Below are positions 42,384-64,000 of a DNA stretch of 64,000 bases, in pieces. The stretch is from Ostrea edulis (Eukaryota). The stretch is from NCBI RefSeq assembly GCF_947568905.1, contig NC_079172.1, positions 18,724,001 through 18,788,000 of the forward strand, written 5' to 3'. Under the pieces are notes generated by a model. It saw nothing but the letters and a program-made list of their open reading frames with translations, had not been told where the DNA came from and did not search any database. A program made the translations under genes and the position numbers. How positions within the stretch are numbered: the stretch's first letter is position 1; each line of letters starts with the position of its first letter.

Positions 42384-42833
42384 TATCAGCCTCTGTAATG
42401 TGACAATTAAATGCAAAGTGCATGTACAGGTGAACTGAATATTGACTTCTTTCAGTATCCTTAATTAGATCAGTTAATATAAATAAAGTGGAAAAGTTCA
42501 TGTAGTTGCCATAAAATGAATGACGTTTTTCTGCTGATGTCATTTAATGATTGTCTATTTGGGTGGGTAATATATTGGTTACTGAACTTGCATTGTCATT
42601 CGGCTTGTCATTTGCAAACTCAGAGAAAGCTGTGAAATGATGATTCTGTTGCCTTGGTTATCCCATATTACAGTTTATAATTTTGCTTGTAAAAGCTGGT
42701 CACATAATTAAAATGCTTGTGTGGAAAATAGATTGATTTAATTAGCATATATACATACCAACATCATGGCTTTCTGTTTAAAAACCTTTGTTAAAATCTT
42801 TTACAAAATTCAAGAGTTGAATTCGTTTGTACT

Positions 42834-43744: not shown

Positions 43745-45108
43745 TAATTGTTAAGTCTCCCAAACGAAGTTTGGAAACTTGTTGTTTTTGCTCAGTTCTT
43801 CTTCTTTATAATGCTTCCAGACTTCTTTTTCAGAACTGCTTCTTTCTCGTGCCTAAAACTGTCAGACACCGTTCTCTGTAACCAGTTGATAAAAGTATTA
43901 GGATATGATAGGCCAATGTATCTAGATGTGCAGAAATGTTTTTGTTTTCAGATTGAAGTTGGCTGGGATACATTTTGGGGGGGGGGGGGGGGGGGGGGGT
44001 CAAATGGGGGTGGGGTTTAACATAGAACTCTATGGGGAAATAATTATTCCAAAAGTCAACAGATATAACTTGGTAAATATGATAAAGTCCTGGGGTCTTC
44101 GGAAATGAAAAGAGAATGACAGGGCCTACAAAATAGTATCAAGGTTAAGTGACTCCAATGACCTTAACCTCTGACCATGAACATAAAAACTTGTGTAACA
44201 TTTAAACCAGGACTAATAGCGACATGGGATCTTCATAAATGGCAAGAGAATGACAGGACCTACAAACTAGTATCAAGGTCAAGTGACTCCAGTGACCTTG
44301 ACCTCTGAACATAAATTTGGTATTACTTAAGAACTAGGTCTGATAAAGAGATAGGATCTTCAGAAATAATAAAAGGATGATGGGATCTACAAATTGGTAT
44401 CAAGGTAAAGTGATTCCAGTGACCTTGACCTCTTATCTTGAACATACATTTGGTGTAACTTTAGAACCAGGATTTATAGAGACCTGGATCTTTGACCTTG
44501 ATTATAAAAACTCGTATAACTTTAAAACCGGGACTGATAGAAAACATGGGATCATCAACAATGATGAGAGGATGAAGGGATCAAAGTTTTACATGCAAAT
44601 ATATAGGAAAAATCTTTTAAAATCTTCTCCACAAGAACCACTGGGCCAGGAAAGTAGAAATTTACATGAAAGCGCCCTGACATAGTGCAGATTCAAGATT
44701 GTTCAAATCATGGCCCTGGTCGTAGGATGGGGCTACTATAGGGGATCTAAGTTTTACATACAAATATATAGGGAAAGTCATTTAAAATCTTCTGAAGAAT
44801 CACTGGGCCAGAAAAGATTCAAGTTTGTTCAAATCATGGCCCCTGTGGGTAGGATGGGGCCACAAAAGGGGATCAAGGTTTTACATACAAATATATAGGG
44901 AAAGTCTTTAAAAATCTTCTGAAGAATCACTGGACCAGAAAAGTTTACATTTACACAAAAGCTTCCTGACGTAGATTCAAGTTTGTTCAAATCATGGCCC
45001 CCAGGGGAAGGATGGGGCCACAATAGGGAATCATAAATTTACATACTAATGTATAAATTTTTTAGATATGGGCCAAGGTGAGTGATGTGGCCTATGAGCC
45101 TCTTGTTT
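43745..45108. mobile_element. compound block of Helentron-type remnants including Cg170-like monomers
   Basis: Left-end motif CTCCCAAACGAAGTTTGGAAAC at ~43757; TCAAGGTCA...TGACCTTGACC repeats at 44130-44440; Cg170-like units at 44570-45050; right end AGGTGAGTGATGTGGCCTATGAGCCTCTTGTTT. Confidence 0.7.
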
Positions 45109-48016
45109 TAAGATTGTTAGCTGTAACTGAAAAGGTTGATAATTGCTACATATATTTATTTTATCGAAGATGCTGGAAAGTGAATATTTTCCCCTTGGTA
45201 GTTTTTTACTATTTAAGACATATTGATCAGGGAACTGAAGACATTTTATTTAGCTTAATTTGCCCATGTGCATGTAGCTGTCCCCTGTAGATGTCCTGCC
45301 TTAAGGTCCAATTATTTGTGCATTGTATGCCATCAATTTACACCAGCTATTGATGTCCATGTTGTCACTGGTAGACAATTTGCATTCACAGATTGCTATG
45401 ATTGAACTATGTACAACTTTGGTACAGCCACTTTATGTAAATTTAGATCTCCATCCAGATTACTTTGGTAGAAACTTGGTCAATGATTTAATAAGCATGC
45501 ATGCACGAGTTGCCTTTTTGAAGGGTGATTATAAAGGTCTTAAACTGCACTATACCAAACTATATAATCATATAAAGGTGTATGTGAATGGAGACATTAA
45601 GCATGATCTATAGGCAAAGCAGACAATTATAACTTTCAGGTGAAAAAGATTCTTGCCTGTATTTGCTTCAACTCACAAATGATATATTAAACAATTGTTA
45701 TTTTTCTTTCATTCTATTTCTTCTGCAAACCTCGGGTGATATTACTTAAACTTGTTCGCAATGGCAAGCATAAAGGACACACCTAGAGCTACTGTTTAAC
45801 ATTTTACCTTGAAGCTGCTAAATGACCTTTGTACTAGATATGAGTGCATGTTCAGTGTAATAAAAAAAAAGATTGCAATGTAGCAATTTCCAGAATTGAC
45901 TTTACAATGTATGTTTGTTAAACACAATCTGGCCAATGTTACAATGTGTTTGTGCAAGTCATACATTACACTCGTGTTGGGGGGGGGGGACGGAAAAATC
46001 ATATCTATCTGCATGAAAGCAGATACTCTGTATCATAAGTTCATCTTATCAGAAATCAGGAAAGAATTTCTTGTGTTTTGCATTTAACACAAGAATCATT
46101 TTATTTTCTCTTAATATTAAAACTTTTCATTTTAAGATAGTAGGTTCACAAATAACATGAATTATCCTTATATATGATATTCCTAAATTGACTGTGAAAT
46201 GAATTTATTCCGCAGAAGACCTTTAGAAAATTTGTTAAGATTTCAGTAACATCTTTGATAAATACTATTGAATTCCATATACATGTATCACATTGAAAAT
46301 CATGTAATCACGATATAAAAACATCAATTAAGAATGTGAACAATAACACTAAATAAACCAATCATTTATGTTGAAACAGAACGCAGAGCTATTATTGAAA
46401 GTTACAGATAGCTATCGGACCAATATACTTTAGCAAGGTGTATTGAAATTACCTACATATCATTCGCAAATAAACAATACAAATAGATATAATAAGTAAA
46501 CGTGGTCTTTCCGGAATTTCCGCCCGCCATCTTGGGATGATAGTAACGACCAGTTTAATACCAGTGAATATACAAATCTGTATATTGTACTGCTTCACTT
46601 GGGAGAGGTCTATACGTAGGTGATGTAATGAGGCCTCGATGGGGAGTTTGAACCCGGCCTCCATACAGAGACGTAGAAAATTTCAGGTCATCATGTGATA
46701 GCTTTTATCCAATCAATTATCTACAAATTTGTCTGAAGTGGGATAGATTAGTTTGGCTTTAACTTTTTGCTGACTATAGTTGATGATTTCAATAAAATAA
46801 TTGTGCATATCTTTCAAAATATGTGAGTTGGGTTTTTTTTTTTTGGTTAAGTTTTGTTGAAGTTAATGGAAAATGAAACACACTTGTTGAGTTAATATAT
46901 AAAGCATGTTCAATGAGTAAGATTGATATGTTCTTTGAAAAGACAAATATCTATTTTCACGACAAAATGTCATGAATTTAGAGCTCTGAAAAAATCTTGT
47001 CGCGAGCAAAATTTAAAAGTTGGCATGTTACGTAACTGCTTCTACGTGCATTGTGGCACTAGCACTCTAATCTGTTTTAAAAGATAAGCTTTTTACTAGC
47101 ATACACTGGATATTACATTGGATATGTGGAGGGTTTTACTCAAACAAACTTGGAGGATCCAAGAATCAGCAGATTACAGAATTTGTTGTATTATAAAATT
47201 GACAAAATATGTCAAATAACTTTTGAAACTTCAAAAGTGCATGATTTTTATAAAACTTGCATTTTAGTGAGAGTTGATGTACATTTTCCTATTCTCCTGC
47301 TTTTGTCAATACTCGGCTAGCTGGGTGAGGGAAGAAAAAGAAATGCAACTTATAAAAAGATTACCATTGAAATAGAGTTATCTCTCTTGGACTTGAGCTA
47401 CTTGCTGGTTCAGTATTTTTCCTTAGTATTCTACAGTAAAACTTGGGATTATTCTTTTGCTCTTCAGCAGAGAAAATGAGCCTTGACACTACTGCACAGA
47501 GAGAGCACAAACTTGTACAGAGTAAGCAGTAAATTTTATAATATTAAAGCTTTTATGGAGAGAATATAAATATTATGAGCTTTAATTAAAGCTTAAATTT
47601 TGATATTGGAAAAGAATATTGTGCTGCTAAGACAAATATTAAAAATGCATGCATACATGCCAATTTTTAAGAATCCCCATGGGGGATTTTGCCCACAGCG
47701 ACCTTTTTTCAAAGTGTTAAATTCGCAACATTTTGTCATGAAAATAAATACTTGTCTTTGCAAAGAAAATATCAAAATTAATCTAATCATTGTACATGTA
47801 TCATATATTAACACATCAAGCATGTTTGCCCATTAATTTCCAACAAAACTAAAAAACAAAAAAAACACTTTGAGAGATATACATAATTATTTTATTAAAA
47901 TCAACTATTCAGCAAAAAGTTAAAAGTAAACTAACATATCCCCTCCAACAAATAAGTTACATATTATTAAATAATGCTTAAAGTTGTATCCTTTTACCCC
48001 ATAACATGACTGGACT

Positions 48017-48782
48017 ATGAAAGGCGAAGATAACGAACAATGATCAATCTCATAACTCCTGTAAGCAATACAAAATAGATAGTTGGGCAAACACGGACCC
48101 CTGGACACACCAGGGGTGGGATCAGGTGCCTAGGAGGAGTAAGCATCCCCTGTCGACCTGCCATACCCGCCGTGAGCCCTATGTCCTGATCAGGTAAACG
48201 GAGTTATCCGTAGTCAAAATCAGTGTGCCAAGAACGGCCTAACAATATTGGTATGAAACATGTCAGACAGCATTTGACCCAATGATAGGTTGTATTGACG
48301 AACTAGATCGTTATAACGACCATAGAATTTGCGAAATGCTGACTTCAATCGAGACTGTTGAAACCCCTGTACCATCAACTTGTTTGTCAGTAGCTTGCCT
48401 CGATTTAAAAATTGACCATACGCAGAACAAGCTCTTGCGTATCGAATCAGTTGAGAGATATAAACACCATATGCAGGTGATAATGGAATATTGCTACATA
48501 AATATGGGAAGTTGACGATGGAGAAGCTGAAATCATCCCATTTGTCATACAGTTGAGTTGTCAGTTTGCCGTTAATGTCTACTTTCAATAAAATATCCAA
48601 GTATGAAGCAGAAGTGGACGACTCTGTGGTGTCTTTTATTTCGAGCTCACAGGGATATATCGAATCGACATATGAGTGAAAGTTATCATTGTTAATAGAC
48701 AAAACGTCGTCGATATATTTAAATGTTGAATTGAAGGCCACAGCAAGAGATTTCTTCTCTCGTATAAGTTTTGGAATAAATA
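48017..48782 (-). mobile_element. 5'-truncated Penelope-like retroelement: C-terminal half of RT (YIDD, thumb) plus 3' UTR; probably Naiad-type
   Basis: Open frame FIPKLIREKKSLAVAFNSTFKYIDDVLSINN...YLDILL...LYDKWDDFSFSIVNFPYLCSNIPLSPAYGVYISQLIRYARAC...; YIDD Tyr codon at 48717-48715. The ORF stops at 48220 with no C-terminal GIY-YIG domain, which fits the N-terminal-endonuclease PLE clade (inference). The ORF-track N-terminus (MFTDSK...) is flanking DNA. Confidence 0.75.
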
Positions 48783-49927
48783 TATCAAAATCTAAATTAA
48801 AGCACATGCATTTAGTTCTGACTGCAAAAACAATCTTGCTGTCTGTAAACATGGCCTTGCAGATCAGTCTGGTGGAACAATCTGCATTGCAACCAGAAAA
48901 GGAGTGTTCTGCCCTGCCACACAGTTTGCGAACAAAACCTTTGCACCCATGACATCTGAAATGATTATCTCTAATCAGAAGTAGAAAAAATCATCAAAAT
49001 ATGTTTTTAGTAGTAAATTACTTGCTACTTGCTAATATCAAATTCAACATTATAAGTTAACTGGCTAAAGTACAGACTTTTGGGGATTACGTATCATAAA
49101 GTCTGTTAAATACTAGGCCCCCTATAACTTTATGATACTTTGCTATAGATTTGGATAGCCTTTATCATTATAACTGAAAAAATATAGTTGACGTACCTAT
49201 TGCATATCTTGGATGCTGTCAGCCATCCCGAAAGGCGAAAATTTCAGGGAATGCCTGATTGTATGGCGGTAACACTATCATCACTGTCATTCACATTTGT
49301 ATAAAGAATTATGTCAATTTGAAATACGTCTTCCTGATTACTTAGTATCAAAACATGCTCCTCACTGTCCAATAAACACCCCCAACATGAGAAAACCAGG
49401 TAAATTACACCACTCTGATACCACGCGACACGGGTAAACAGCAGCAATGGCTGATTATTGTCCCAATTTCCGATACAAAGAAATGATACGGGGTTTCAAA
49501 TTCAGGTTGGAAATCAGGGTTTGTTGTTGTTAAACGGGAAATATTTTTAGGAAATCGGGATTTTGGGTTATTTTTGTAATTCCGATCAGGATTTGTCTTT
49601 TCAACTGCTTCAAATCGGGATAGTTAGCATGTATGTGCATGAATGAGTTATTCAGTTTGTCTGCACACCATTTTGTGTTATTAACACAATTTATGTAAAA
49701 ACAAACACAAAAAATTGTTCAGTGGTGCATGAACAACACACAGTCCCCTTCCTCAATGTGGAATATACACTGTGAAATAGGTGTTTGTTAACATTGCAAT
49801 ATAACATAGGGCTCTATATAACTGCTATTTATAACTGCAGGGCTGTAGATACATGAGATTCAAACATTGAGGTTTGATTAAACCATTAGTAATTAAAATC
49901 ACCCATAAAGATTAAAGATAATATGTT

Positions 49928-50411
49928 CCAGATATGACCAATCGATCAGATCAGTAATCAATCACTAATCGATAGTAATCAAACACTTGTCGATTGATTA
50001 TATTTACTAATTGATAAAACTCGCCTAAGAGTATGATCGATTACATTTCGATCGATCATACTTGTAAAATCAAAGAACAACGACACTCTCTCTCAATGAT
50101 ACTACTTGTAATTAATTCACACCTAGTTAGGTAATGATAACGCAACATATCTAAAAGACTCAAATTTATAACCTGAATGTTCAATAGCTGGAAAAGTTAA
50201 TAAAATTCAGATTTACAATTAGAAGTCTCATCACCAGTTACATTTACAATATCTATAATCATATGTAAACTTTTGTTCTTTGATTTTACAGCTATTATCA
50301 ATCAGAAATCTATCGAAATGTAATCAAACTCTTTGGAGAGTTTGATCAATTAGTAAAGGTAATCAATCGACAAGTGATTGATTACTGATCTGATCAATTA
50401 GTTATGTCTGG
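49928..50411. mobile_element. long-TIR MITE with apparent 6-bp TSD
   Basis: ~150-bp imperfect inverted arms (CCAGATATGACCAATCGATCAGATCAGTAATCAATCAC / GTGATTGATTACTGATCTGATCAATTAGTTATGTCTGG); TATGTT on both flanks. Confidence 0.75.
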
Positions 50412-52264
50412 TATGTTACAACAAGTGTATTTCTGAGTCAGACACATATATGTTGTAATATTACTGACTGAAGTCTTTTGGGAGCATATTAGCAAAGTAA
50501 TGCTGTCTGGCTACCGTAGAGAAATTAGATTTTTCCTTCATGGATTTTATGTAGTCTGTTTTGTAGTTAATGTGCAGGCTTAATTGGTTTTTACGAGCAG
50601 AGGATTAGGAAATTATAGTTTGGCCTTAAATGTGTAGACTGTCTGCTGCTACCAGATGCATGGTGTTCTGTCTTGATGAGCCCTTAACTCAGTTTGAGGA
50701 AATAAAATCTTGAAGAAACTGCACAAGACAAGAAAAAATCTTGAAATTGCATGAGACAAGAAAAAATCTTGAAACTGCACAAAATATAGAAAGAAACGAT
50801 AAAGGACATATCGCATGTTACTAAACTTTTGAATTTTTGTAGCAAAATTAATTCTTTGCATGCCTAAAATGACCTTAAATGTGTTTTAAATAAGAAAATT
50901 TGCGTAATTTTTTAGTTTGAAAATGACAAGATTTAAATCTTGCGATATTCATATTTTCTCCCTGTATTTAAAGCGCCATTATGTGCAACATCACGACCTG
51001 GAGCGGGAAGGTTTGAAAACAGCTAGCTGTTCACCATTTTATAAATGGACTAGAATTATAATCTACTAAAAAAGCCAATTATCATGTTAATGGCTTCTAG
51101 GTAACATTGCGTTAGGGTGTTTTGCGCCAGCAGTTACAAGTACTAGCTGTTAGAAGAAGGGACCAAGACTGACTTTTTAAAAAAAAAATTGAAGGAACCC
51201 TCCTTCCTGAGGTGTGACGCAGCCTTCCAAATTCTGTACAAAATGAAATAAACAAATATGAACATATTGAATGAATATACAGTATCAAATGCCATATTGT
51301 TGCACCATACTTTCGTATGGATATAAGTGGTAGGCCTATAGTTAATAAAGAACAAACCCATGATTAATAAACAAACACATGACTGGTAATGATGATTATC
51401 AAAAGATAAATTAATTTTCTTGGTCTCCATTATATATAGACTTAAAATTCCTGAGAAATATTAAAATTACAATTTCATATTTGCTACTGTACTTTTCAAA
51501 AACATCAAAACAAATTTGTTAATGATATAAGCGATGGATGTAAACAGAGTCTTTATAGGTAAGAGGAATTTCAGTAATAGGCCTCTGTGCTTTCTTTATG
51601 TATCCTGTTATAGATTTTCAGTTTAAAGGTAGATAACTTGAACCTACTTTGTGAAAATTGAGATAATTGTCTCTAATTGCTAAAATCTCGGTAAACCGAC
51701 CACCCCTCTAAACCGTTGGGGTTTTTTTTTTGGTCCGAGAGCCACCGGTTTAGAGAAGTTTCTCAATTATTTCTAGGGCTATGGCTATTATGAGGTCAAT
51801 AAGGCACGAGTATTTTTGTAGATGTAAGTTGTTAAAGGTATAAATCTAACAGAAAACATTAACATGGCTCATTCATTATGAAGATAAGTAAAATTACACT
51901 TAACCAATCCAACTTTAAGCATTGCGTATTTCAAATTGTTTACTGTTTATTATCATCCGGCCACCATATTGTTTTTTACATACTGGGTATTTTCAGCATG
52001 CAACCCCAGCAAAATTGAGTGAAAGTAATTGTATATACGTTGTTTTGTTTCATTTGGTTTAGATAATTCATATGTAACATATGAATGATTTCATTTATTC
52101 GTGTAAAATATCTGAAATAATAATGTATACCAGTCTGTGTGTTTAATATCAGAGTTATTTTTCTTTCCCCCTCCTTCCTTCCTGTCTGCTTCCTTATTAA
52201 CCATTTAGAAAGTGTTAGAAAGCAATTTTTCATCTCCATATGATGGTGGTTTTTTTTTAAAATA

Positions 52265-53183
52265 CAGGTGACTCTTGATAATTCAAAGTTCAAGGGACCT
52301 AAATTGATAAAACTTCGAGAGTTCGAAATTCATAAATTGAAGGTCCGCCGGTATGGTTAAGATTTTATAGTAACCGGAAATGTTTACCAACAAGATCATA
52401 TCGTTTTGACATGTTTTCCTTCATATTCGTCAGGTATTCGTCAATATAAAAAACCTTATTTTGCATTTATAAAAACATTTCAAAGTTTATGTATTTATTT
52501 GTTTTTTAATCATGCTTAGATATAGCTAGCATACAAAACCAAATTCCGATGAAGCTTTACTATCACAAACTAAACAAAGCACAACATTATGTCGCTTTAC
52601 CCATGCAAAGCAAGAATTCTAACGAATGAGTAAAACAATGTTTTAGAGTAACTTTACACAAAGAACAAACTCGAAAAATTTAACAGTCTGTAGATCTCTA
52701 AATTATGTATAAAACTTACTCTCTCGTTGTCAAGTCAAAACAAATTATAGATTTTATTCATAGTTGGATTATTATAATACATAATTTTAATCAAGACACA
52801 AAACCCCAGTGTAAGGTGTAAACTGACCAATTAGCCAATTATATACTCCAGTGTGTCATCTCCACAAAGAGGCACAGTGGATGTTTCAACTATGTAAACA
52901 CCTAATTACCACTCCAGCATTCAACAAATCCGGGTAGGGTCCAAGCGGAAATTAGTACACGCTTGGGTAACGATGGGTATATGCTACCACAACTTCGAGA
53001 GATCGAGAGTTAAAAACAATGAAATGTGTTTTACGGGACTCAACTTAACTTCGAGAGATCAAGAACTTCGAGAAATCGAACATTCGAGAGATCGATAGGA
53101 AATTTACTTTGTTATGTAAAGAAAAAATGGGTACCATGATTTCACTTCGAGAGATCGAAGTTCGAGCCATCGAGAGTCACCTG
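52265..53183. mobile_element. TA-flanked pogo/Tigger-like MITE, 919 bp
   Basis: TA|CAGGTGACTCTTGAT ... ATCGAGAGTCACCTG|TA; TTCGAGAGATCGA subterminal repeats. Confidence 0.85.
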
Positions 53184-53269
53184 TATAGGCCATGCATGAA
53201 TAGGTTGATATGGTGTATTGGTCAACACAAGCGAAAAAAAAGTATTGACCTTATTACAGAAAATTATGG

Positions 53270-54712
53270 TAATACTCAGGTGACTGATAAGATGTGTTGT
53301 CTTCAGGTAGTGCAGATTGAAGTTTGTTCAAATCAATGCCTCGGGCCACAATATGGATTCATTTACATCGGAATATATATATATACATATATAGAAAAAA
53401 TAATGTAAAATCTTCTGGGAAAAACAGGGCCGTGATTAGTATGCATCTGTCAGAATCATTGTTAAAATCTTTGTCAATATCTCCAATTGAAAATTTTCTG
53501 GTGAGTTCATTGCAAAATTGCCAAATTATAAATCCTGAAAATAATAACCATTGTCATCTCAAACATGAGTCAGGTGTTCAGTTGAAAGTCTATCAGCTAT
53601 GATATGATATGATAGCTGCGGCAGCTGATAGAATGATTATGGTCAAGCCCTCGTGTAAATAATGCACATCCTCAAAGTTTGCTTAATTAATTTCTTTGGA
53701 AAAAATGCATGGAGCACCCCCAAAATTTTCTCAGAAAGAAAATGCTTGCCCTATGTTTATTTCACATAAAAAAGATAATGAAATGAAATAAAAATTCATA
53801 AATGAAAATGATAAATTAAAATGAATTTCTGTCTTATATTGCATGCTGATGTACTTTTCGTGCTAGCATACTTGAATATATAAATAAACACAAGCCTATC
53901 TGTTGTAATATTGTATCACACTGCTCTGGCTATGTGCAATTAATACGATGTCTTTCATTCAATTGAACACATTTCTAAACAGCTATCAAGATCACTTGAA
54001 CTTGGCTATCCCGTGTGTGCTGAGGTATGGCTGGTGATCGACTTAAGTACACTTGTACCAGAGAGTCAGTCTGCGGATTTTTTACAGAGTACTAGATTAA
54101 AGCCTCCAAGCATTCCAATACGCTATCTGAGTAAAATTGATATCCCTAGTTAGAAATGTTCTCAAGAACCACTGCAGTCATGATTTGTGAGCATTCCAAT
54201 GAAGTGTAGACTCATACTTGATCAAATCATATTCCATGGGACTAAAATAGGGATTTAAAGTTTTACATAAAAAATGTTTAGGAATCATATTGTTATGCAA
54301 GCTTTCCAAGGTGTGTGGATTGAAGTTTTTTTGGGGGGGAGGGGGGTGCTTCAAATTATGGACCCTGGGGTTACTAGGATTGGGAGATAATTGGGGAACA
54401 AACTTTTATAATTCATTAATAATTTTAATAATTCATGAATAAAGGGTAAAAAGAATTTTTTAAAAATATATATATAATTATATATCTTTTTCGGAACAGC
54501 ATGACTTTGTTAGGAATATTAATATCAATTAAAGCACTCATGTGTTGTGGATTCAAGTTTGCAGGTTAAGTCATGACCTAGGTCATAATTCGGAGTGAAA
54601 ATTGATCTGGGAATAAGGAAGTGGAATTTTTTTTACATGTTTAAAAAACTTCTAAAGATATACCAGGACTAAAGTAACTCTGGTGAGTGTTATGGCCCAT
54701 GGGCATTTTGCA
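53270..54712 (+). repeat. old Helentron-type / Cg170-like remnants
   Basis: GTGCAGATTGAAGTTTGTTCAAATCA and CTCAAGAACCACTG fragments; decayed right end TGGTGAGTGTTATGGCCCATGGGCATTTTG at ~54682-54711. Confidence 0.5.
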
Positions 54713-56349
54713 GCTTTCATATGTGTAGTAACCCCCAAATCTGAAAAATCCAGCCCCAAGTTACCCATCATGTTATCCTTTCTGCAGAAGCATTGGGGCT
54801 TTCAGATTACAGAAACTTATTTGACTGTAAAGTTTTCAATTCAAATAACTTTTGATGTCTTTGAGATGTAGCTTTCATAGTTGAAAGATGGATTTGTGAA
54901 TACTTACAAATTTTCTACTACTCTTGCTATTGTTTTGGCACTTGGTATTATTGGAAGAAGAAAAAATGAAGGTTATCCAAGTACTTTTTCTTAGTATTTG
55001 TTATGATGGTTGTGTACGTATGATTAGGTATTCATTTACAACAAAAGGTTGCACTAATTTCATTCTTATTAGAGACTAGAGTTCATTCACATCCTTTACG
55101 CGGCTTCAAGAATTTCCCATAAATAATTCCAAGGATAACTCTAACTGTTTTACATGCATACAGTTTTTGTGTTTTGTAGCCTGCAGGAAGTGGGGTTTTA
55201 TGGGGAATAAGATCAGTACTGGGTAATAACAAACTCAAACAGAATAGAGGCTACACTGGAGTGTAAATTTATCTCCTTAATAGTCCTGGAGTCCCACAGC
55301 TTGGATTTGTGCTTTGCGATCTCTTGGAATTGTAAACAGTGATTGGGGAACTTTGGGTCCTGTAGTCTGTTGATTTAATTGTTCTGTTGGTTATACTCAT
55401 TAAACTTTGGTTGCAAGGTTAGAAAATGTAAACATTTTTTTGTTCTTTTCTCTTTCACAAGTCTCTGTTTTTATCTTTTCAGTCTGAGAATAAACTTCGG
55501 TGAACTTATGTAAGCTTATGATCATCTGTAAGATATTACTGTAATGTTAGAATTCAATGTCATTTTACAGAAAATCTTTTGATAGTTTGTTCATATAATT
55601 CTCAGCATCTAGAAGAAAAACAAAACATATTCTGATTTGCCTGATTCTTGTAATTTCTGAGAAAAAGTTTTGATGACCATTATTTGCCGACACTTGTATG
55701 ATAGTTATATCACACAAGCTATCAGAAGGTAATATTCTGAATAAGAATAGACGAGGTAATGGACATTTATCTTGGCTATAACTTTTTAATGGAGAGACAG
55801 TATAGAAGCTTGATTACACACTGTCACAAAAGTTGCTGATGATTAGAGAGTGTGTGATATAACCTTGAATTAATGTCAGTTGCTCAAGGTCACAGTTACT
55901 GGTAAACTAATCAGAAATGTCTGTTCTAAGCTACTGTAGACGTATTTAATTTTGTTGTTTTTGTCATGAACACAATTTCATGTGAATTAATTTTCGTTGT
56001 TTGTGATTACTTAAAATTATGTATTAAACATACAAAGTATAAACAATGTCGCTTATCCGCAAGACTTGTTTAAACAATTTAAAAATATGATACGATACCC
56101 ACGTACGCCATTTATAAACCATTTGTTCGACAAAGCGTAATGTTGTTACATGTAGCACGTATTTACAAACAAATCCTCACTAGGTGATCCATGTAAGCCT
56201 TGGTCATTAGATTGTTGTACTCGAGCCATTACAATGTTGAAACCGTTTATATTGTGTTCTGTTCATCAATTTCGTTGATAAAATTCGTGAAGAAATCAGA
56301 TATATCGGTAAATACAAGGCTCGTGTCCTTTCCCTGCTCAATATAGGGA

Positions 56350-57156
56350 TTTTGATACCAAGGTGTGGCCAAAATGGTCATAGTGATGTGTCTGTTAACA
56401 ATTTTCCCTTCCAATTCCTTTCAAACTTCAAATGAAGCATCTTTAGGACAAGGAGGACATCAGTTGTAAATTTCAGGATTTCTGCACCCCTGGGGCCTTG
56501 GGGGCGAGATAAAAACTGCCCAAAATTGACCAATTTTCAAAAATCCTTTATCTACAACTACACACCTGTCAGAAAAACCAAATGCATAGTCATGTAGAGC
56601 AGGAAGGCCTCTACCAAAATCGTAAATTTCATGAACCTCGGGATTTATGTGTAAAAGAGTTAGATCTAAATGGATCTTGGTACCAAAATTGTAAATTTTG
56701 TGATCCCAGGGGTAGCGGTTTTGGTTCCAGGATGGGGCCAACATTATTATTGTGATTATTGTCTTGATTAATCAGTTGAAAGACTTCTTTAAAGCTGATT
56801 TCTTCTTTAATTTTGCTGATACTTTATTAAAACTAAATGCATATTTAGAAAAATCAGAAAAGGGTGTGCCACAATTGTGAATTTCGCAACCCTGGGATTT
56901 TGACTAGGGGAGGTCCAAAATAGCCATAGTATCAATATGACATATAATTATACTATATTTTGTATAGTCTTTCATCAGTTTGGACACCTTTGGGGGTATT
57001 TGTAAGAACACATATTGTTTTATACTGCTGCTGAATATTAAAATTTTGCTCAGATATCCAGAACAGGAAAATTATTCTAGATTTTATAGTCCTTGGGGCT
57101 AGTGATGCTTTTAATTAAAGCTCAGGCATCTGATAAGGTCTCTGGACCTGCATGTT
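56350..57156 (+). mobile_element. Helentron-type element, collinear with 21040-21929
   Basis: Shared internal units and a decayed right end CTCAGGCATCTGATAAGGTCTCTGGACCTGCATGTT. Confidence 0.7.
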
Positions 57157-57214
57157 GTTTGGTTTTAACATGAAGGAATACTGCAGTATCATAATATGTA
57201 TGTCCAGTGTTTCA

Positions 57215-57334
57215 TATTTTGCCTCAATTTCTTTTGTAGGTAAGTTTTCTCAATGTGAGTTTAGAAGAAAGGTCATAATTGAAAGTTATCCACCTTTCTT
57301 GACATTTTAAACAGATTGTCAAAAGCAGGTAAGA
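57215..57334 (+). other. candidate recursive splice site and 89-nt RS-exon in the long PSMD1 intron
   Basis: ATTTTGCCTCAATTTCTTTTGTAG|GTAAGT (junction 57239/57240) followed by a second donor CAG|GTAAGA (57328/57329). Motif evidence only. Confidence 0.45.
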
Positions 57335-57357
57335 TCTTATCTGTCTTCAGAATTAGA

Positions 57358-57476
57358 GATTGATTGATTGATTGTATCTTGCTTAACACCCCTCTCGAGA
57401 ATTTTTCACTCATATGGAGACATTACCAAGACCGATGAAGGGCTTCAAATTTGGGCCTTTGCTCGGCGCTTACGGC
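57358..57476 (-). mobile_element. 5'-truncated SINE 3' end
   Basis: (GATT)n tail followed by GAGAATTTTTCACTCATATGGAGAC...GGGCTTCAAATTTGGGCC, the same body as 22440-22520. Confidence 0.75.
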
Positions 57477-59436
57477 ACATATAATGGTACATATTGCGCC
57501 CATTGGAAGGTTATATAGTATGTTTTTATTATAAGATGTTTGTTTTTTTTTACATTGATTAGTAAACGCGGCAAAAATGTCAGGAGTTGTAGAACTTTAC
57601 TTTGTTTTGTATCATATGAATAAGGGAATTAGGCCAGCAATTTATTTACTGGTCTTTTGAATTTTCATATCTATTCAATATATGGTTTAACTTTTAATTT
57701 GTGGATCATAGGTTTTAATCTTGCAGAATTTGATTTTTTTTAATGTATAACATTAAAATGTATACCTTTGCAAGAGTTTATGCAAATTCTATTACATAAA
57801 CTCAATATTACATGAATGCAATACTTTCCTTTTTTGGTTCTCATATATCTCCTTAAACCTCCCCCAATAAGACATCCATAGTTGAGAAGCAAAATGCTTA
57901 CAATATGCTCATCTTCAAGTTGTTTACAAAAACTGGGCGCCACCAGATAACTGAAAAAATTGTTGAGTGTAGCGGAAGACATCAATCAATCAATCAACAA
58001 AGGCCATAGCTTTAAGACTGAGAGGATCGAGTCAAAAGGACTTGATTATATTTCCTTAAAACTGACTAAGTTCAATAACATGTTATTTTCTCAAAAATTG
58101 AAGGAAATCATCATCAATGCCCATACAAACAATCTGTAAAATACGAAGGTCCTCACTTGAAAATTGTGCCAGACAAATTATGTACCCTCCTAGAGTGACC
58201 CACAAATAAGCTACACAGCAAGTTTCAGCTTGGTATGTTACAGATATGAAAATAGACACAGAAAACCCTGAATGGACGGACGGACAGACATCGCTGTACC
58301 ATAATACATCCCATCTAAAGACATGATACATTGTATTTCATAATTCAGTGTGTAATGACATTGACAGCATCTTCATTTTGTTTCCTGCAGAATATACATG
58401 GTGCTTGTATCACTTTTTTGTCTGTCTGTCAGTCTGTGTGGAGATACACTTGTAGGCAACACAATGATCCTATGAATTCCTTGTGTAAATGAAGAAAGAC
58501 TACTTTTATCACATGGTTAATCATGGCAACTTGAAAAAGAATTTACAAGAAGCAGCCCAACATGGTGTTATCAGTGAAGGTGTCAGTGTGTCTGTGTTGT
58601 GGTGATGTGATGTGAGGCTGGATGGGCACAGTAACAGACCACCCATTTACTTTCAGATATATTGAGAATCAAATTATTGTGCATTGTTCTTCCTAATGAT
58701 ATTTAATCTATAATGAAAAGATACAGAATATCTCTGTGTGTATTTTACACTGCAGAGGATGAAGATTTCTGGAGCTTATTGTTTTTGCAAGCAGGGTCTG
58801 TCGGCTCTTATGTCAACATCTTTAACCACGATCACTGCTTTGAGCTATACAGGAATGACACCTTTATGAAATCATTTTCTGTCCTGCTTTGGTGACTGCA
58901 TTTGTTAATGGGAAAGGACTATGTAGCTTCATTTTATTTTTTTTTACTCCTTTTTCAACTTTGCTTATTATTTCAACTTTGGTATTATAAATATTTTTAT
59001 TCTTTGAAACCCTGAATTAAAATAAAAAATAAAATACAGTACTAATGATAGAAACACAAATCATTATGAATCTCACACCTCTAATTACTGAAATTAGTCA
59101 TTTTGGGTCAGCTATGGAACACAGGATGAGATGTGACGATTATATAATTAGGTTTAATTACCAATGCATGCCAAATGCACATTTTGTTGTTATATCGATT
59201 TTCATTACAGGGAAATGAATATCATCATGTTATATTTAGATTCCAACATTATTATTGGTATGAAAAACTTTAAAATGCAGTGATTCATTTGACAATAATT
59301 GGAAATGACATGACAATGCCACTGATATAGAGGTCACAATACCAGTCTGATTATGTTAAAAGAAGCATCAAAGGCTATTCCATGGCTGTTCCAACATGTT
59401 GACTAATGAACAAGAAGACTACTAGAAATTGGATTA

Positions 59437-60859
59437 CAGTGGAACCCCGTTATAACATTTCCCCTTTATTACGTTAGTCCGCATATTGCGTTGGAATTTC
59501 AAAGCACAAAACTGTTTCTTAACAAACCTATATAAAATAGACCTCGTTATTACGTTGTCCCAAGATGCCGGGACTCAGTATTATGTTGTAAAAATTCTGA
59601 CAAAAACATAATAAATTAAACTCCTAATTATTCAATAGTGATTCTCAAAATAATAAGCCATTCACACCTTGACTGCCCCAGGCAGTCACCTTGTTTTCCT
59701 AGTCTGTTAGGGGATTAGAGACGCTTGACTGGTCATGCTTTGATAGATCTAGTGACATCCATAGGGGTGAATGAATACCCTGTCTTGAAGCCAGTGATAA
59801 GCAATTAAATGATGTTTATTTAGAAATTGTACTCAATAAAATTTTCTTCATTTTTCATATTTTGACGATCAAAGAAATAATAATTTCTCAACCACATGCA
59901 TGTTTAGCATTGTGTGATTGCTTTCGATATTAAAACTCTTATTTACGGACAGCTTTGGTACCAAACATGTAGGACCAAATTTCTCGTCTCACAGTTTAAA
60001 CAGCTTGGGTTGGCTTGGATATAGTTAGGTGACTAAAGGCAGTGTTCAATTTAAAAAATTGTCAGTTAGTTTGACATAATAGCTTGGGTGTTGTTAGATC
60101 TCATCCATAAATACGCCGATCAAACTGCACAGTGTTATCGGCCGATTCGTGCACGGCTTTTAGCTCAGTGAACATTTTAAAATTCCTTGATATTTTTGTT
60201 AATGTGCATGTGATTTTAGTGCCATCATTTAGTGTTATAAATGTGATCTTAATATTAGTGCATTATTATTTTTTAAAAAGTGGATTGCGTTTGTTCTCCG
60301 TGTTTATCGTTGGTGAAAAAGTGTGTATAAGTGTTAGATATCGCGTGCATTTTGTGTCGTAGTTTTGTTGTTTTTTGGGTGGGATTTTTAAAATTGTGTT
60401 TTATATCGTGTAGTAGACATATAATTTAATAAAAACAATGTTTTGTTATTTTTTGTTTTATGTACAAATGTTGAATACGAAGCGGAAAGAGTTATTGAGA
60501 GAAATTTATATGAACGCATTTTGTTAAAGTTGAACAAAATGGCGGAAACGAAAGCAGATAAGGAATGCTTATCAAAGCATCCTTATGTATCCTACACAAG
60601 AAATAAAGAAAAGGGATGAGAACATTAAGAATTACGGACATTTAAGATAAGATGTAAATAAATCAAGTGTCATTTAAACAAAGAAACAGTAGAGAAATAT
60701 TCACACACACACACACCCCTTCACTGAGTATCAATGGAAGATATGCAATTTCCAAATGATATTTTTAACGGATTTCACTGGCAACGTGTATTACGTTGCC
60801 CCCAGTATTACGTTATTTTATCATGACAAAATGAGAAACGTAATAACGGGGTTCCACTG
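59437..60859 (-). mobile_element. TA-flanked non-autonomous pogo/Tigger-like element, 1423 bp (copy 2, inverted relative to 40949-42383)
   Basis: Same TIRs and TA flanks; the body is the reverse complement of copy 1 along its length, roughly 85-90% identical by eye. Confidence 0.92.
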
Positions 60860-63416
60860 TATTACCACGACACCTATAAATATATCACATAGAACTAACT
60901 GGGTTTTTTTTAAATCCCACCAATGTGCCTGGTGAGTACAGTCAATTTCAACCCGTTTTCAGGATCTTTATTTGGAAATTTATACTGGTATGGTGATACC
61001 TCAAGCCCTATAGTTTTATTTTTGCTTTCGCAGTCCAGGTGGTATTTAAGTTTCAAAATAATGTCCTTAGAACAAAAGTTAACAATGTGAAAAGAAACTC
61101 GATTGTACTAAAAATAATGAGACGAAAGGACAACAAAAATATAAGAGAATTAGGAAATAATTAGATTTCTGTAGAGAATGTGTAACTGCTAACATTCACC
61201 CAGGATTTTTTAGTGAAGGAAGCTGTGTAGCAAATTCACTTGTTTGTATTGCTCATTAAGAGGTTAATGAAAAAATCAGTAGGAGAGTGGATTGCTCCAA
61301 AAAGGTGATTTGTTGTACAGACAAATGTCATAGTTTCATGTAATCATTCATATCTTCATCTACATGATTTGTGTTTATCATTTCTATACCTTCCGATTAA
61401 CACATGTATTAATATCTAATATTTACACAGGTAATATGATTGATGGTTTTGAAGACAATGGTCCTTTCCTTTTTCTTGCTTCTACCTTAAATCTCTCTGT
61501 TGCAACCAATCTGCGATATCTACTGTGGATTTAGAATTCTATGTATCTACTCCCCAATCATTTGACAGTATAGCTAAATGTTAATTTAAACAATGACAGC
61601 ATGTGGATTTTCAAATTTAGTTAGATTTAGATCTACTTCCTATTGTTTTTCTTTTTCACCTTCAAGGCATCAGTTCTTTCCTAGCAACATTGGTTGATTG
61701 GGGGGGTTTAATGCCGTATTGGCAATATTTTAGCTATTTTATGGAGGTTAGCTAAATAAAGTATGATTGGTTTTGAAGAGTGTTGTAGCATAGGAGTTAA
61801 ACAGAATAGATATACAGTATATATAGCAATAGTATCGTTGTCACCTCATTTCAGTACTTTCAGTACTTTGATTTTTAATAAATTTATTGAGTTAATCATA
61901 ATACTGTGCAACAGTGTGTAGCGAAAGACGCCAAAAGATGACCACTTTTAAAACAAGCAGAGATCTTTTGTAACTGTAATGTTTATAAAAGAAATCTGAA
62001 GGATCCCAACATTATCTCATAATAAGTGGTATCTCTAGATATTTTATCTCATTTTAAATGAAGTCCACTGTATATTGATTGAGTTGAGAAATCATGTACG
62101 TTAAGTTATTGCGTAAAAAAAATATCCGTTCTATAAATATTTGAAGTGCATAGAAATTCTAATGTTATCAGATTTTCATCCCACTCTCAAAGCAATTACT
62201 GATAAACACTGTGTTTTTTCAGATTGTTTTCATTGACTTTCCTCTCAATTTACTTATTTCTAAGTATTTTGTTGATTCAGATGTGTTTGTGAATTACTTT
62301 TGATTAACATTGATTGGTTAGACATGTTGCAAACTTCATTTTACCTCATGTGGATTCTCTTACATACAGGAAGTCGAGAAGAATTATCTTTTATCTTGAT
62401 TTGTTGTTCTGAGGGGATATTTTTTTGCAATAAAAAGAGATGTGAAATAGACATTTTCTGATATAAAATTTTTCTCAACTTTACAATGAAAATGTGAAGA
62501 ACAACAGTATAATGGGGAAAATAACAAGTAATTGAAAACTGTTGAAATAAAGTACTACAGTGGAGCTTCGTTAATCTGGACACTTGGGTTCCTTGCAAAT
62601 CATCAGTAGGATGGTTAACTGATTGCATGTATCTTCATATATTTGTAATCAATGTGCTTGCTTCTTTGATATGTGATATGAAATACACATTAACAGTTTT
62701 CTTTTTTACCATATTTTCCCGAATATGATAAGTAGTTATGTTTAATATGCCCACCCCATCCCATTTTGCGTCTGATACACAGTATTAACAGAAAGAACAA
62801 AAATTCTAAAACATATTGTTTGGTTATTAAGATAGCATGTCATTTACATTGAAACATGCATATTCAGTAAAACAAATACATTTTTGATCTGAAATGTTTA
62901 TTCTATCACAGCTCAGGTTAATCAACTCATGAAGTATACTGTATATAAATTTCAAGTCTGTGACAAATATATTGCAACAAGTATTTGAAGCACTCTCTGT
63001 ATTATTGTACATTTATTTTAGATAGGACAATTATGACAGTACATAAATTATATAATATACCAAAATGAATAATCATAAAACAATTAAGAGACAAAAATTC
63101 TTAAGGACAAAAAAAAATGGATGTATGGGTTGATATCAATTTTATGGCTTAATTAGTTTGGTTTTAATAAGTACAAAAGTACAAAATTCCTTAAATGCTA
63201 GGGGACTTCATTCTTTTAAATCTTCATTTTTTAAAATTCTATTGTCAAAAGTTATTGAAATCTATAACAAATTTTCCCCACTGTACTTATAGTCATTTAG
63301 AACTCATGGGAATGCATTATATTCCATATGGTAATTTGTATTCATTTTACTCATAACAACATGAATTTAGTTTTCATTTTCTAATAAAGTTTGTTTGCAG
63401 AACTCTTGATTCAAAT

Positions 63417-63510
63417 GATCGCATAGGATGAAACTAAGGAAACCAGTCTCAGTTCCGTCAATAGATCGCATAGGATGAAACTAAGGAAACCAGTCCCAGT
63501 TCTGTCAATA
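63417..63510. repeat. 47-bp direct tandem duplication in the 3' UTR region of receptor paralog B
   Basis: GATCGCATAGGATGAAACTAAGGAAACCAGTC(T/C)CAGTTC(C/T)GTCAATA twice, at 63417 and 63464, with two mismatches. Confidence 0.9.
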
Positions 63511-63618
63511 GTTACTAGTTATAACATCCTATATGTTCTACTGTTTCCAACTGCTGCTGGTCGTAATCCACAGTGCTGATTATCATCGCCTTTCTCCATT
63601 TTGTTTTTATTGCAACAT

Positions 63619-64000
63619 TTAACATGGCGTTTCACACTTATCAATACTGTTGTTGGAGTCTGATCCGTTGTGGTAAAAAGACCCATTACTGACCATCCAG
63701 CTCTGGACTCTCTGTTTCCTCTGAATACGGTCATAGCGACACAACAGTAATTTCTTGAAGGTCATTTTGAAGGTCTTGTTAAACATGGTGTAGATAATTG
63801 GATTCAGGGTACTGGACACATACCCCAACCAGTTGAAGGATGCATACAAAGCTGCTTTAAAATTGCAGTCTTGACAAAGCGGTGTCATGATGTTGAGAAT
63901 GAAGAATGGAGCCCAACACACAACGAAGATGACGAATACAATTCCTATGACTTTAGAAGCCTTCTTCTCAGTGTGAACATCATCTAGCTTCTGAATATGA
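63619..64000 (-). CDS. HTR2: second 5-HT2-type serotonin receptor (paralog B), partial: end of ICL3, TM6, TM7, C-tail; 5' part lies outside the window
   Basis: Frame open from the window edge: HIQKLDDVHTEKKASKVIGIVFVIFVVCWAPFFILNI...FNWLGYVSSTLNPIIYTMFNKTFKMTFKKLLLCRY...CETPC-stop. EKKASKV, CWAPFF..N6.55 and FNKTF..LLCRY are 5-HT2 family signatures. Confidence 0.85.
   Translation of the reverse strand, partial: HIQKLDDVHTEKKASKVIGIVFVIFVVCWAPFFILNIMTPLCQDCNFKAALYASFNWLGYVSSTLNPIIYTMFNKTFKMTFKKLLLCRYDRIQRKQRVQSWMVSNGSFYHNGSDSNNSIDKCETPC

What the first reader, a model, noticed from the sequence alone, without database searches (positions are those of the whole stretch)
63619..64000. A second, divergent 5-HT2 paralog in tandem within the same host intron
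Seen: same strand as paralog A, with its stop 25.7 kb upstream of A's ATG. TM6-TM7 are clearly homologous but well diverged (CWAPFFILNI vs LWTPFFTVNI; WLGYVSSTLNPIIY vs WMGYTASLANPIIY), with unrelated C-tails (ETPC vs HSPL). Inference: an old tandem duplication that happened inside the PSMD1 intron and was retained, giving an intronic serotonin-receptor cluster independent of the vertebrate 2A/2B/2C expansion. B looks closer to the typical protostome 5-HT2 tail (FNKTF..LLCRY).
Basis: partly seen in the sequence, partly recalled or inferred. Interest (0 to 1): 0.7.

Follow-up and report, generated by a model that had tools for sequence, protein, structure and literature searches.

The report
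Second intact 5-HT2 receptor nested in PSMD1
The window's edge holds the end of a real, intact second serotonin 5-HT2 receptor gene that sits in tandem with its ancient paralog inside one intron of the proteasome gene PSMD1, an arrangement that is older than molluscs and probably dates to early bilaterian animals.

Summary
Window 63619-64000 (minus strand) is the TM6-TM7-tail end of gene B. B continues beyond the window as an intact two-exon, 540-aa receptor (G000:C9:18787619-18796609).

- **Family.** B is a 5-HT2 receptor. Its best solved-structure matches are 5-HT2C/2A/2B, all key binding and activation motifs are present, and it falls in a 100/100 5-HT2 clade.
- **Nesting.** B and paralog A lie head-to-tail, 25.7 kb apart, antisense in one 73.7-kb GT-AG intron of PSMD1. 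They share the same phase-1 intron. They are the only two close 5-HT2-type matches among the scored candidates in this oyster genome.
- **Age.** A groups with insect '5-HT2B' and B with insect '5-HT2A' and nematode receptors, while vertebrate 2A/2B/2C form a separate clade.
- **Conservation.** Abalone keeps the same B-then-A pair inside PSMD1. Single 5-HT2 genes sit antisense in PSMD1 in limpet, brachiopod, nemertean, hemichordate and skate. In a sea urchin the gene lies directly after the same PSMD1 exon.

Whether the split predates deuterostomes is unresolved. First-stage notes on this same genome had already flagged the nest (s1-287390, s1-274694). No note on other DNA came up in the two look-ups made (by place, and by the word 'PSMD1').

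The parts
63619..64000 (-). Gene B (5-HT2, B-type), 3' part of coding exon 2: end of ICL3, TM6, TM7, helix 8, C-tail ETPC and stop. Exon 2 continues to window-equivalent 64862 (L004 1862). Exon 1 is at L004 9231-9609 (G000:C9:18796231-18796609), outside the window.
29520..31801 (-). Gene A (5-HT2, A-type) coding exon 2: TM3-TM7 with a roughly 470-aa third intracellular loop, plus stop. Acceptor AG at 31803-31802.
37587..37878 (-). Gene A coding exon 1 (N-terminus, TM1, TM2). Donor GT at 37586-37585, phase 1 in a Gly codon, the same position and phase as in B.
7884..8099 (+). PSMD1 (Rpn2) coding exon (..[15 protein letters not shown]). The 5' boundary is approximate.
13854..13917 (+). PSMD1 coding exon (VSDVNDDVRRVAVTSLGFLLF-R), the last exon before the host intron. 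Donor GT at 13918-13919.
13918..64000 (+). Part of the 73,679-bp PSMD1 host intron that lies in the window. The full intron is G000:C9:18737918-18811596. The next exon ([21 protein letters not shown]..) starts at 18811597.

Best explanation
Window 63619-64000 is the 3' end of gene B, an intact and almost certainly functional serotonin 5-HT2 receptor gene of an ostreid oyster. B has two coding exons separated by a 7.4-kb phase-1 intron and encodes 540 aa. It lies 25.7 kb upstream of, and on the same strand as, its paralog A (857 aa, giant ICL3). Both are antisense inside one 73.7-kb intron of the essential proteasome gene PSMD1. Shown here: B's intactness, its 5-HT2 family membership, its position in the same intron as A, the shared intron position and phase, and conservation of the B-then-A pair inside PSMD1 in abalone. 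Also shown are single 5-HT2 genes nested in PSMD1 in limpet, brachiopod, nemertean, hemichordate and skate. Inferred: a 5-HT2 gene was already nested in PSMD1 in the bilaterian ancestor. It duplicated in place by DNA-level tandem duplication before the Ecdysozoa-Spiralia split. That gave an A lineage (insect '5-HT2B') and a B lineage (insect '5-HT2A', nematode 5-HT2-like). Molluscs kept both copies in the nest. A breakpoint in the intron would break an essential host gene, so the nested genes are positionally locked. B most likely binds 5-HT through D3.32, S5.43, F6.51/F6.52, N6.55 and Y7.43, signals through Gq/PLC, and uses its C-terminal E-T-P-C as a PDZ-type scaffold ligand.
For: Gene model: the exon-1 and exon-2 ORFs, GT-AG boundaries and phase were read. 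The junction leaves exactly one Gly between the exon products, as in the annotated Crassostrea angulata ortholog. Pfam 7tm_1 positions 1-46 fall in exon 1 and 50-260 in exon 2.

Family: phmmer against solved structures ranks 5-HT2C/2A/2B at 190-150 bits, ahead of D2 at 148, and exon 1 gives the same order. The alignment to 5-HT2C shows D3.32, DRY, GS..AFFIPL, WxPFF..N and NPxxY conserved.

Orthologs and paralogs: orthologs are 87% identical in Crassostrea/Magallana and 83% in Saccostrea. A and B were the only close 5-HT2-type matches in the own genome. No extra copies or fragments occur in the 143 kb around them.

Host gene: PSMD1 exons were mapped.

Tree: the rooted IQ-TREE run had 101 rows and 208 columns. 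Support was 100/100 for the 5-HT2 clade, 96/92 for the A-type clade, 99/97 for the B-type clade and 100/99 for vertebrates. Adding TM1-2 columns gave the same groups.

Synteny: searches show nesting. Searches show the urchin gene directly after the same PSMD1 exon.

Other shared characters: the TM2/ECL1 intron position is shared in ten of the eleven genes examined, from eight phyla. The C-terminal [ST]-x-C/hydrophobic motif is shared by the B-type clade and deuterostomes and is absent from the A-type clade.
Against: Expression is inferred only from sequence conservation and from full-length orthologous products found on short assembled contigs of 2-3.5 kb in Crassostrea/Magallana.

The AU test rejects a spiralian-only duplication only marginally (p 0.047, lnL difference 17.3). 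The base of the 5-HT2 clade is a polytomy, and neither 'A+B protostome clade' nor 'B+deuterostomes' is rejected.

The A-type gene is not nested in a nemertean. The B-type gene is not nested in a spider. The Lingula A-type gene is intronless and sits at a scaffold end. The two-gene nest is therefore documented only in molluscs.

Untranslated 5' exons of B are unknown. Ligand and G-protein coupling are inferred from residues only.
Confidence: 0.8

Rival explanations
1. The duplication is lineage-specific (molluscan or spiralian). Under this view the grouping of A with insect 5-HT2B and of B with insect 5-HT2A is an artefact of unequal rates, because A-type proteins are fast-evolving with huge loops.
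For: The AU test only marginally rejects spiralian A plus spiralian B as one clade (p 0.047). The two-gene nest inside PSMD1 was seen only in molluscs. The tree uses only 208-276 columns.
Against: Each of the two clades contains both Ecdysozoa and Spiralia, in roughly species-tree order, with 96/92 and 99/97 support under a site-heterogeneous model. The clades recur when TM1-2 columns are added. An independent character agrees: a C-terminal Cys/PDZ-type motif is shared by mollusc, nemertean, spider and insect B-type proteins and is absent from A-type proteins. Lingula and nemerteans each have both types.
Confidence: 0.12
2. B (or A) did not arise in place. One copy is the ancestral resident of the intron and the other moved in later by segmental transposition, so the tandem look is secondary.
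For: Outside molluscs the two types were found together in the nest in no sampled genome. A is outside PSMD1 in Lineus and on another scaffold in Lingula.
Against: A and B share strand and order, are adjacent with no other receptor exon between them, and have an identical intron position and phase. The same B-then-A order occurs inside PSMD1 in abalone. A and B types sit on the same contig or chromosome in several bivalves and gastropods, a nemertean and a wasp (contig lengths). Secondary insertion of a second 5-HT2 gene into the very same intron is far less parsimonious than tandem duplication. Retroposition is excluded because both copies keep the intron.
Confidence: 0.08
3. B is a decaying or non-functional duplicate (pseudogene), or belongs to another aminergic family such as D2-like dopamine receptors, as some database names of its orthologs say.
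For: Some orthologs are named 'D(2) dopamine receptor' by automatic annotation. No expression data could be obtained for this species.
Against: B has an uninterrupted 540-codon frame, canonical splice sites and all activation and ligand-binding motifs intact. It is 87% identical to orthologs in another oyster genus, and orthologs occur across bivalves, gastropods and cephalopods. 5-HT2 structures outscore D2 by about 40 bits. B falls inside a 100/100 5-HT2 clade, separate from nine other aminergic-type receptors of the same genome.
Confidence: 0.03

Closest known systems
Vertebrate HTR2B nested antisense in PSMD1
   Same: A 5-HT2-family receptor gene lies antisense inside the PSMD1 gene. This was shown here for a skate HTR2B. 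For human it is indicated by a SNP annotated as intronic to both HTR2B and PSMD1 (PMC5562334). The TM2/ECL1 intron position is the same, and the protein ends in a PDZ-type C-terminus.
   Different: Vertebrates keep one receptor in the nest, with 2A and 2C elsewhere. The oyster has two in tandem. Vertebrate 2A/2B/2C form one clade separate from both oyster genes. Whether the vertebrate host intron is the same one was not tested. The skate gene has an additional coding intron.
Arthropod 5-HT2A (5-HT2alpha) and nematode 5-HT2-like receptors (SER-1 type)
   Same: B falls in the same strongly supported clade (99/97) as proteins named 5-HT receptor 2A in Stomoxys, Cotesia and a spider, and as nematode receptors. 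These proteins share the C-terminal [ST]-x-C or E-T-x-hydrophobic ending. The honeybee alpha and beta receptors are functionally characterised 5-HT2 receptors, and 5-HT2 receptors couple to Gq and raise intracellular calcium (PMC3855752).
   Different: The insect proteins are much longer (about 680-1090 aa) with large N-termini and loops. The spider gene examined is not nested in PSMD1. The pharmacology of B is untested.
Annotated mollusc 5-HT2 paralogs (e.g. Sinonovacula constricta Sc5-HT2-1/-2/-3; Crassostrea '5-HT receptor 2C-like')
   Same: B's orthologs are already predicted in public oyster, scallop, mussel, clam, gastropod and cephalopod genomes. The razor-clam survey places all three Sc5-HT2 genes on one chromosome (PMC10603676).
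   Different: In the text passages checked, that paper does not describe tandem order, nesting in PSMD1, or orthology of the paralogs to arthropod 2A/2B. Heterodont clams have an extra B-type copy that oysters lack.
Ancient conserved microsynteny and nested-gene pairs (Irimia et al. 2012, PMC3514665)
   Same: A developmental or neural gene is kept next to or inside a housekeeping 'bystander' gene across phyla.
   Different: The main text of that paper mentions neither PSMD1 nor HTR2B, and its supplements are not held. Here the constraint proposed is physical nesting in an essential host gene, and the nest carries a tandem pair.

Membership tests
5-HT2 receptor subfamily (class A aminergic GPCR) | Complete rhodopsin-family 7TM domain | tested here: met
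   Pfam 7tm_1 matches exon 1 at profile positions 1-46 (49 bits) and exon 2 at positions 50-260 (159 bits).
5-HT2 receptor subfamily (class A aminergic GPCR) | Aminergic and activation motifs: D3.32, DRY, CWxP, NPxxY, and the ECL2 Cys | tested here: met
   TADVLMC, SLDRY, CWAPFF and NPIIY are read directly from the sequence and align to the same positions of human 5-HT2C.
5-HT2 receptor subfamily (class A aminergic GPCR) | 5-HT2-type orthosteric residues (G5.42-S5.43, A5.46, F6.51, F6.52, N6.55, Y7.43) | tested here: met
   GSVCAFFIPL, PFFILN and WLGY align column by column with GSFVAFFIPL, PFFITN and WIGY of 5-HT2C. The residue numbering comes from general knowledge of the family.
5-HT2 receptor subfamily (class A aminergic GPCR) | Closer to 5-HT2 than to any other solved aminergic receptor | tested here: met
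   The top 29 distinct chains are all 5-HT2C/2A/2B (190-150 bits). The first other receptor is D2 at 148 bits. Exon 1 gives the same order.
5-HT2 receptor subfamily (class A aminergic GPCR) | Phylogenetic placement inside the 5-HT2 clade against outgroups | tested here: met
   The 5-HT2 clade has 100/100 support against nine other aminergic-type receptors of the same genome. The quick tree with TM1-2 columns gives the same result.
5-HT2 receptor subfamily (class A aminergic GPCR) | Family-typical intron between TM2 and TM3 (after the ECL1 Gly) | tested here: met
   A phase-1 intron sits in the Gly codon in both B and A. Protein-to-genome mapping puts an intron at the same place in limpet, abalone, Lingula B, nemerteans, spider, urchin, hemichordate and skate. 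Phase was read only for the two oyster genes.
5-HT2 receptor subfamily (class A aminergic GPCR) | Binds serotonin and couples to Gq/PLC | not testable with these tools
   This needs heterologous expression with a calcium or IP assay.
B-type protostome 5-HT2 clade (insect 5-HT2A/alpha, nematode 5-HT2-like) | Clade membership with ecdysozoan and spiralian members | tested here: met
   A 44-row clade has 99/97 support. The spiralian-only alternative is marginally rejected (p 0.047).
B-type protostome 5-HT2 clade (insect 5-HT2A/alpha, nematode 5-HT2-like) | C-terminal [ST]-x-C or E-[ST]-x-hydrophobic ending | tested here: met
   B ends ETPC. Gastropods, cephalopods and a nemertean end ES-x-C, a spider ends STMC, and nematodes end ET-x-L/I. 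Among 38 A-type proteins only one ends in Cys.
Receptor nested in PSMD1 (HTR2B-PSMD1 type locus) | Coding region wholly inside one PSMD1 intron, antisense | tested here: met
   The intron spans 18737918-18811596 with GT-AG ends. B's CDS is at 18787619-18796609 on the opposite strand. PSMD1 N- and C-terminal domains lie on either side.
Receptor nested in PSMD1 (HTR2B-PSMD1 type locus) | Same host intron as in deuterostomes | tested here: inconclusive
   In the urchin Diadema the receptor lies directly after the exon ending ..LGF..FR, the same exon that precedes the oyster host intron. In the skate and hemichordate loci no PSMD1 exon fell within the 10-kb flanks. Human was not examined.
Tandem gene duplicates | Same strand, adjacent, same exon-intron structure, no other family member between | tested here: met
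   The same order occurs in Haliotis rufescens, with B at 1892059-1908506 and A at 1777584-1814666, both reversed, inside one PSMD1 model.

The most novel reading that the evidence does not exclude
The 5-HT2-in-PSMD1 nest is a bilaterian-ancestral locked locus more than 550 million years old. The protostome 5-HT2alpha/5-HT2beta split arose as a tandem duplication inside that intron. Molluscs are so far the only sampled animals that still show the ancestral two-gene configuration, while other lineages let one copy escape or lost it. If the split turns out to predate deuterostomes, vertebrates would have lost an entire A-type 5-HT2 lineage.
Probability: 0.55. Interest if true: 0.65.

Novelty: new member of a known kind. 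Interest (0 to 1): 0.5.

Why it matters
Gene B itself is ordinary. It is a conserved serotonin receptor that automatic annotation already predicts in related oysters.

The context adds three things:
- It gives a positional marker, independent of the tree, for orthology among invertebrate 5-HT2 receptors. Their nomenclature (2A, 2B, 2C-like, 'D2-like') is visibly chaotic in the databases.
- It links mollusc paralogs A and B to the arthropod 5-HT2B and 5-HT2A lineages. That matters for transferring pharmacology between model insects and aquaculture molluscs, where 5-HT is used to induce spawning.
- It provides a clean example of a nested gene pair held in place across most of bilaterian evolution, with a duplication inside the nest. 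This makes the 'locked by an essential host gene' idea testable by surveying where and how copies escaped.

Tried and rejected
- **Reads evidence.** No reads were laid and expression is untested.
- **PC_rep scan.** The Pfam PC_rep scan of the own genome did not pick up the PSMD1 repeats on contig 9. The middle exons were found instead by motif search in translated frames.
- **PSMD1 exons in other loci.** tblastn of four oyster PSMD1 exon peptides against the eleven fetched loci hit only the urchin locus. 'Same intron' therefore could not be checked in skate, hemichordate, limpet, abalone, Lingula or nemertean.
- **Rooting.** AU tests could not decide between a protostome-stem and a pre-bilaterian duplication. 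Adding TM1-2 columns did not resolve the basal polytomy, and that careful run did not finish, so the quick tree was used.
- **Alignment.** The first MAFFT --auto run timed out. It was replaced by HMM-anchored blocks of TM3-TM5 and TM6-H8.
- **Literature.** No paper in the held library describes 5-HT2 nested in PSMD1 outside SNP tables. The supplements of Irimia et al. 2012 are not held. Goulty et al. 2023 does not discuss 5-HT2 subtypes in its main text.
- **Insect locus.** The Cotesia 5-HT2A look-up found no record.
- **Intergenic ORF.** The 210-aa ORF at 48220-48852 has no Pfam match.
- **Rejected readings.** Pseudogene, other aminergic family and retrocopy were all considered and rejected.
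- **Spliced models.** The joined proteins of A and B were not sent to any search or fold. All searches were exon by exon, and annotated full-length orthologs served as proxies.
- **Human sequence.** None was fetched or compared.

Full report
**What is at the coordinates.** On the minus strand, window 63619-64000 reads as the end of a class A receptor. It covers the end of the third intracellular loop, TM6 (CWAPFFILNI), TM7 (WLGYVSSTLNPIIY), helix 8 (FNKTFKMTFKKLLLCRY), a short tail ending ETPC, and a TAA stop. BLASTP of A against B gives 45-54% identity in the transmembrane blocks, with E-values from 1e-21 to 1e-29.

**The rest of gene B.** The window is G000:C9:18724001-18788000. I fetched the adjacent DNA.
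- B's exon 2 runs from L004 1862 to 619. It is preceded by a polypyrimidine tract and an AG.
- Exon 1 runs from the ATG at L004 9609 to 9231 and is followed by GTAAG.
- The 7.4-kb intron splits a Gly codon after its first base. The product is 540 aa with no stop or frameshift.
- Gene A has the same structure. Exon 1 is 37878-37587 and exon 2 is 31801-29520, with the same Gly codon and phase, giving 857 aa with a roughly 470-aa third loop.
- The exon products of B and A align to annotated full-length orthologs (Crassostrea angulata, Saccostrea echinata). Exactly one residue, a Gly, lies between them, so the junctions match independent annotation.
- Pfam 7tm_1 is split as expected, with positions 1-46 in exon 1 and 50-260 in exon 2.

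The joined proteins were not sent to any search or fold.

**Family.** Against all solved structures, B's exon 2 matches 5-HT2C, 2A and 2B first (190-150 bits). D2 dopamine follows at 148 bits, and 5-HT1 is lower. Exon 1 gives the same order. The residue-level alignment to human 5-HT2C shows the following conserved:
- D3.32 and DRY
- the ECL2 cysteine
- GS..AFFIPL in TM5
- WxPFF..N in TM6
- W.GY....NP..Y in TM7

In the oyster's own genome the only close relative of B is A. The next best hit is 28% identical. No further receptor exon or fragment lies in the 143 kb around the pair.

**Host gene.** PSMD1 (Rpn2) lies on the plus strand.
- RPN2_N exons are at 18697140-18701844.
- Two middle exons lie in the window, at about 7884-8099 and at 13854-13917.
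- The next exon starts at 18811597 with [21 protein letters not shown].
- A further exon lies near 18821290, and RPN2_C is at 18837602-18839641.

The intron from 18737918 to 18811596 has GT-AG ends and is 73,679 bp long. It contains the whole coding region of A (18753520-18761878) and of B (18787619-18796609), both antisense. PSMD1 resumes 15 kb beyond B's ATG. Untranslated 5' exons of B remain unknown.

**Relatives and tree.** B has orthologs of 542 aa in Crassostrea/Magallana (87% identity) and in Saccostrea (83%). This marks the genome as an ostreid oyster outside those genera. Further orthologs occur across bivalves, gastropods, cephalopods and Lingula. A has orthologs in Saccostrea (65%), other molluscs, nemerteans, annelids, Lingula, rotifers and a mosquito.

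An exhaustive representative search with B added arthropod, nematode, echinoderm, hemichordate and vertebrate sequences. I named these through cluster look-ups.

I built HMM-anchored blocks of TM3-TM5 and TM6-H8 (208 columns). The tree was IQ-TREE with a site-heterogeneous model. It was rooted on nine other aminergic-type receptors of the same genome. The results were:
- The 5-HT2 clade has 100/100 support.
- The A-type clade (96/92) contains millipede and insect proteins, including ones named 5-HT receptor 2B in Cochliomyia and Cotesia. It also contains rotifers, annelids, nemerteans, Lingula and molluscs.
- The B-type clade (99/97) contains nematodes and chelicerate and insect proteins, including ones named 5-HT receptor 2A in Stomoxys, Cotesia and a spider. 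It also contains a nemertean, Lingula and molluscs.
- Vertebrate 2A/2B/2C form one clade (100/99).
- Ambulacrarians form a weak separate group.

These groups meet in a basal polytomy. Adding TM1-TM2 columns gives the same groups (quick tree).

AU tests gave the following:
- 'A+B protostomes form one clade' is not rejected (p 0.31).
- 'B plus deuterostomes form one clade' is not rejected (p 0.30).
- 'Spiralian A plus spiralian B form one clade' is marginally rejected (lnL 17.3 lower, p 0.047).

The A/B split is therefore independent of the vertebrate expansion. It most likely predates the Ecdysozoa-Spiralia split. Its timing relative to deuterostomes is open.

**An independent character.** B-type proteins end in E-[ST]-x-C or E-[ST]-x-hydrophobic.
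- Oysters, mussel and scallops end ETPC.
- Gastropods, cephalopods and a nemertean end ES-x-C.
- Heterodont clams end ESQL.
- A spider ends STMC.
- Nematodes end ET-x-L/I.

Deuterostome 5-HT2 proteins end in S-x-V-type motifs. A-type proteins have no such ending. From general knowledge, such endings are PDZ ligands in mammalian 5-HT2A/2C and in C. elegans SER-1. That B's ETPC acts this way is an inference.

**Synteny elsewhere.** I used the gene tables around exact-match proteins.

| Species and gene | Arrangement |
|---|---|
| Patella vulgata, B-type | Antisense inside a full PSMD1 model |
| Lingula anatina, B-type | Antisense inside a PSMD1 model |
| Tubulanus polymorphus (nemertean), B-type | Antisense inside a full PSMD1 model |
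| Haliotis rufescens, A and B | Both antisense inside one PSMD1 model, B upstream of A as in the oyster |
| Saccoglossus kowalevskii (hemichordate) | Antisense inside a full PSMD1 model |
| Amblyraja radiata (skate), HTR2B | Antisense inside a full PSMD1 model |
| Diadema setosum (urchin) | 3 kb beyond the last exon of a truncated PSMD1 model |
| Lineus (nemertean), A-type | Not nested |
| Spider, B-type | Not nested |
| Lingula, A-type | Intronless, at a scaffold end |

In the urchin, that last PSMD1 exon is the one ending ..LGF..FR. This is the same exon that precedes the oyster host intron.

- Saccostrea
- Sinanodonta (locus tags 018488 and 018490)
- Mya
- Dreissena
- Babylonia
- Tubulanus
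- Cotesia

The TM2/ECL1 intron is at the same place in all examined genes except the intronless Lingula A. This excludes retroposition as the origin of A or B.

**Interpretation.**
- Shown: B is an intact 5-HT2 gene. It lies in tandem with A inside one PSMD1 intron. The pair is at least as old as the bivalve-gastropod split. A single nested 5-HT2 gene is present on both sides of the protostome-deuterostome divide.
- Inferred: the ancestor gene was already nested, it duplicated in place before protostomes radiated, and essentiality of the host gene keeps the nest intact.
- Untested: ligand, G-protein coupling, PDZ binding and expression.

**Literature.**
- A razor-clam survey lists three 5-HT2 genes on one chromosome. 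The passages I checked do not mention tandem order or nesting (PMC10603676).
- A human SNP table annotates one variant as intronic to both HTR2B and PSMD1 (PMC5562334).
- Honeybee work defines arthropod 5-HT2alpha and 5-HT2beta (PMC3855752).
- I found no paper in the held library describing the nest outside vertebrates, or the tandem pair. This is not proof of absence.

**Verdict.** The gene itself is ordinary and already predicted in related species. The conserved two-gene nest is a modestly novel comparative-genomic observation. First-stage notes on this same genome (s1-287390, s1-274694) had flagged the nest. I tested that claim for non-human species and agree with it.

Noticed in passing
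window 63100-63400 and 63411-63504: The DNA just 3' of B's stop is a dispersed repeat with dozens of copies at 69-87% identity on many contigs of the genome. It includes a 47-nt unit present twice in tandem. It is probably a short non-autonomous mobile element in or next to B's 3' UTR.
   Followed up: partly
window 48220-48852 (minus strand): A 210-aa ORF lies between A and B and contains a Y-I-D-D motif reminiscent of reverse transcriptases. It has no Pfam match and is probably a decayed retroelement fragment.
   Followed up: partly
L014:1462-3927 (Lingula anatina scaffold LFEI02000984.1): The Lingula A-type 5-HT2 gene is a single uninterrupted 821-codon exon at the end of a 98-kb scaffold. 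Every other 5-HT2 gene examined keeps the TM2/ECL1 intron. This could reflect intron loss, a retrocopy, or an N-terminally truncated model that starts inside TM3.
   Followed up: partly
L019:14798-21783 (Diadema setosum OZ188206.1): The annotated urchin PSMD1 model (639 aa, no RPN2_C) stops exactly at the exon that precedes the receptor. The annotation has probably split PSMD1 at the nest, and the receptor is likely nested there too.
   Followed up: partly
proteins P0002-P0332 (C-termini): A C-terminal cysteine preceded by [ST]-x is shared by B-type 5-HT2 receptors of molluscs, a nemertean, spiders and insects. It is absent from the deuterostome sequences examined and occurs in only one of 38 A-type sequences. 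It is a possible clade marker and an unusual PDZ-ligand variant.
   Followed up: partly
proteins P0080, P0099, P0083, P0101, P0119: Heterodont clams (Sinonovacula 5-HT2-1, Mya, Mactra, Dreissena, Mercenaria) carry an extra B-type paralog that oysters lack. This points to a later duplication within bivalves.
   Followed up: partly
database names: Orthologs of A and B are variously named 5-HT2A-like, 2C-like, D(2) dopamine, D3-like, octopamine or tyramine receptor, or alpha-2B adrenergic by automatic annotation. The names are unreliable guides to family.
   Followed up: yes
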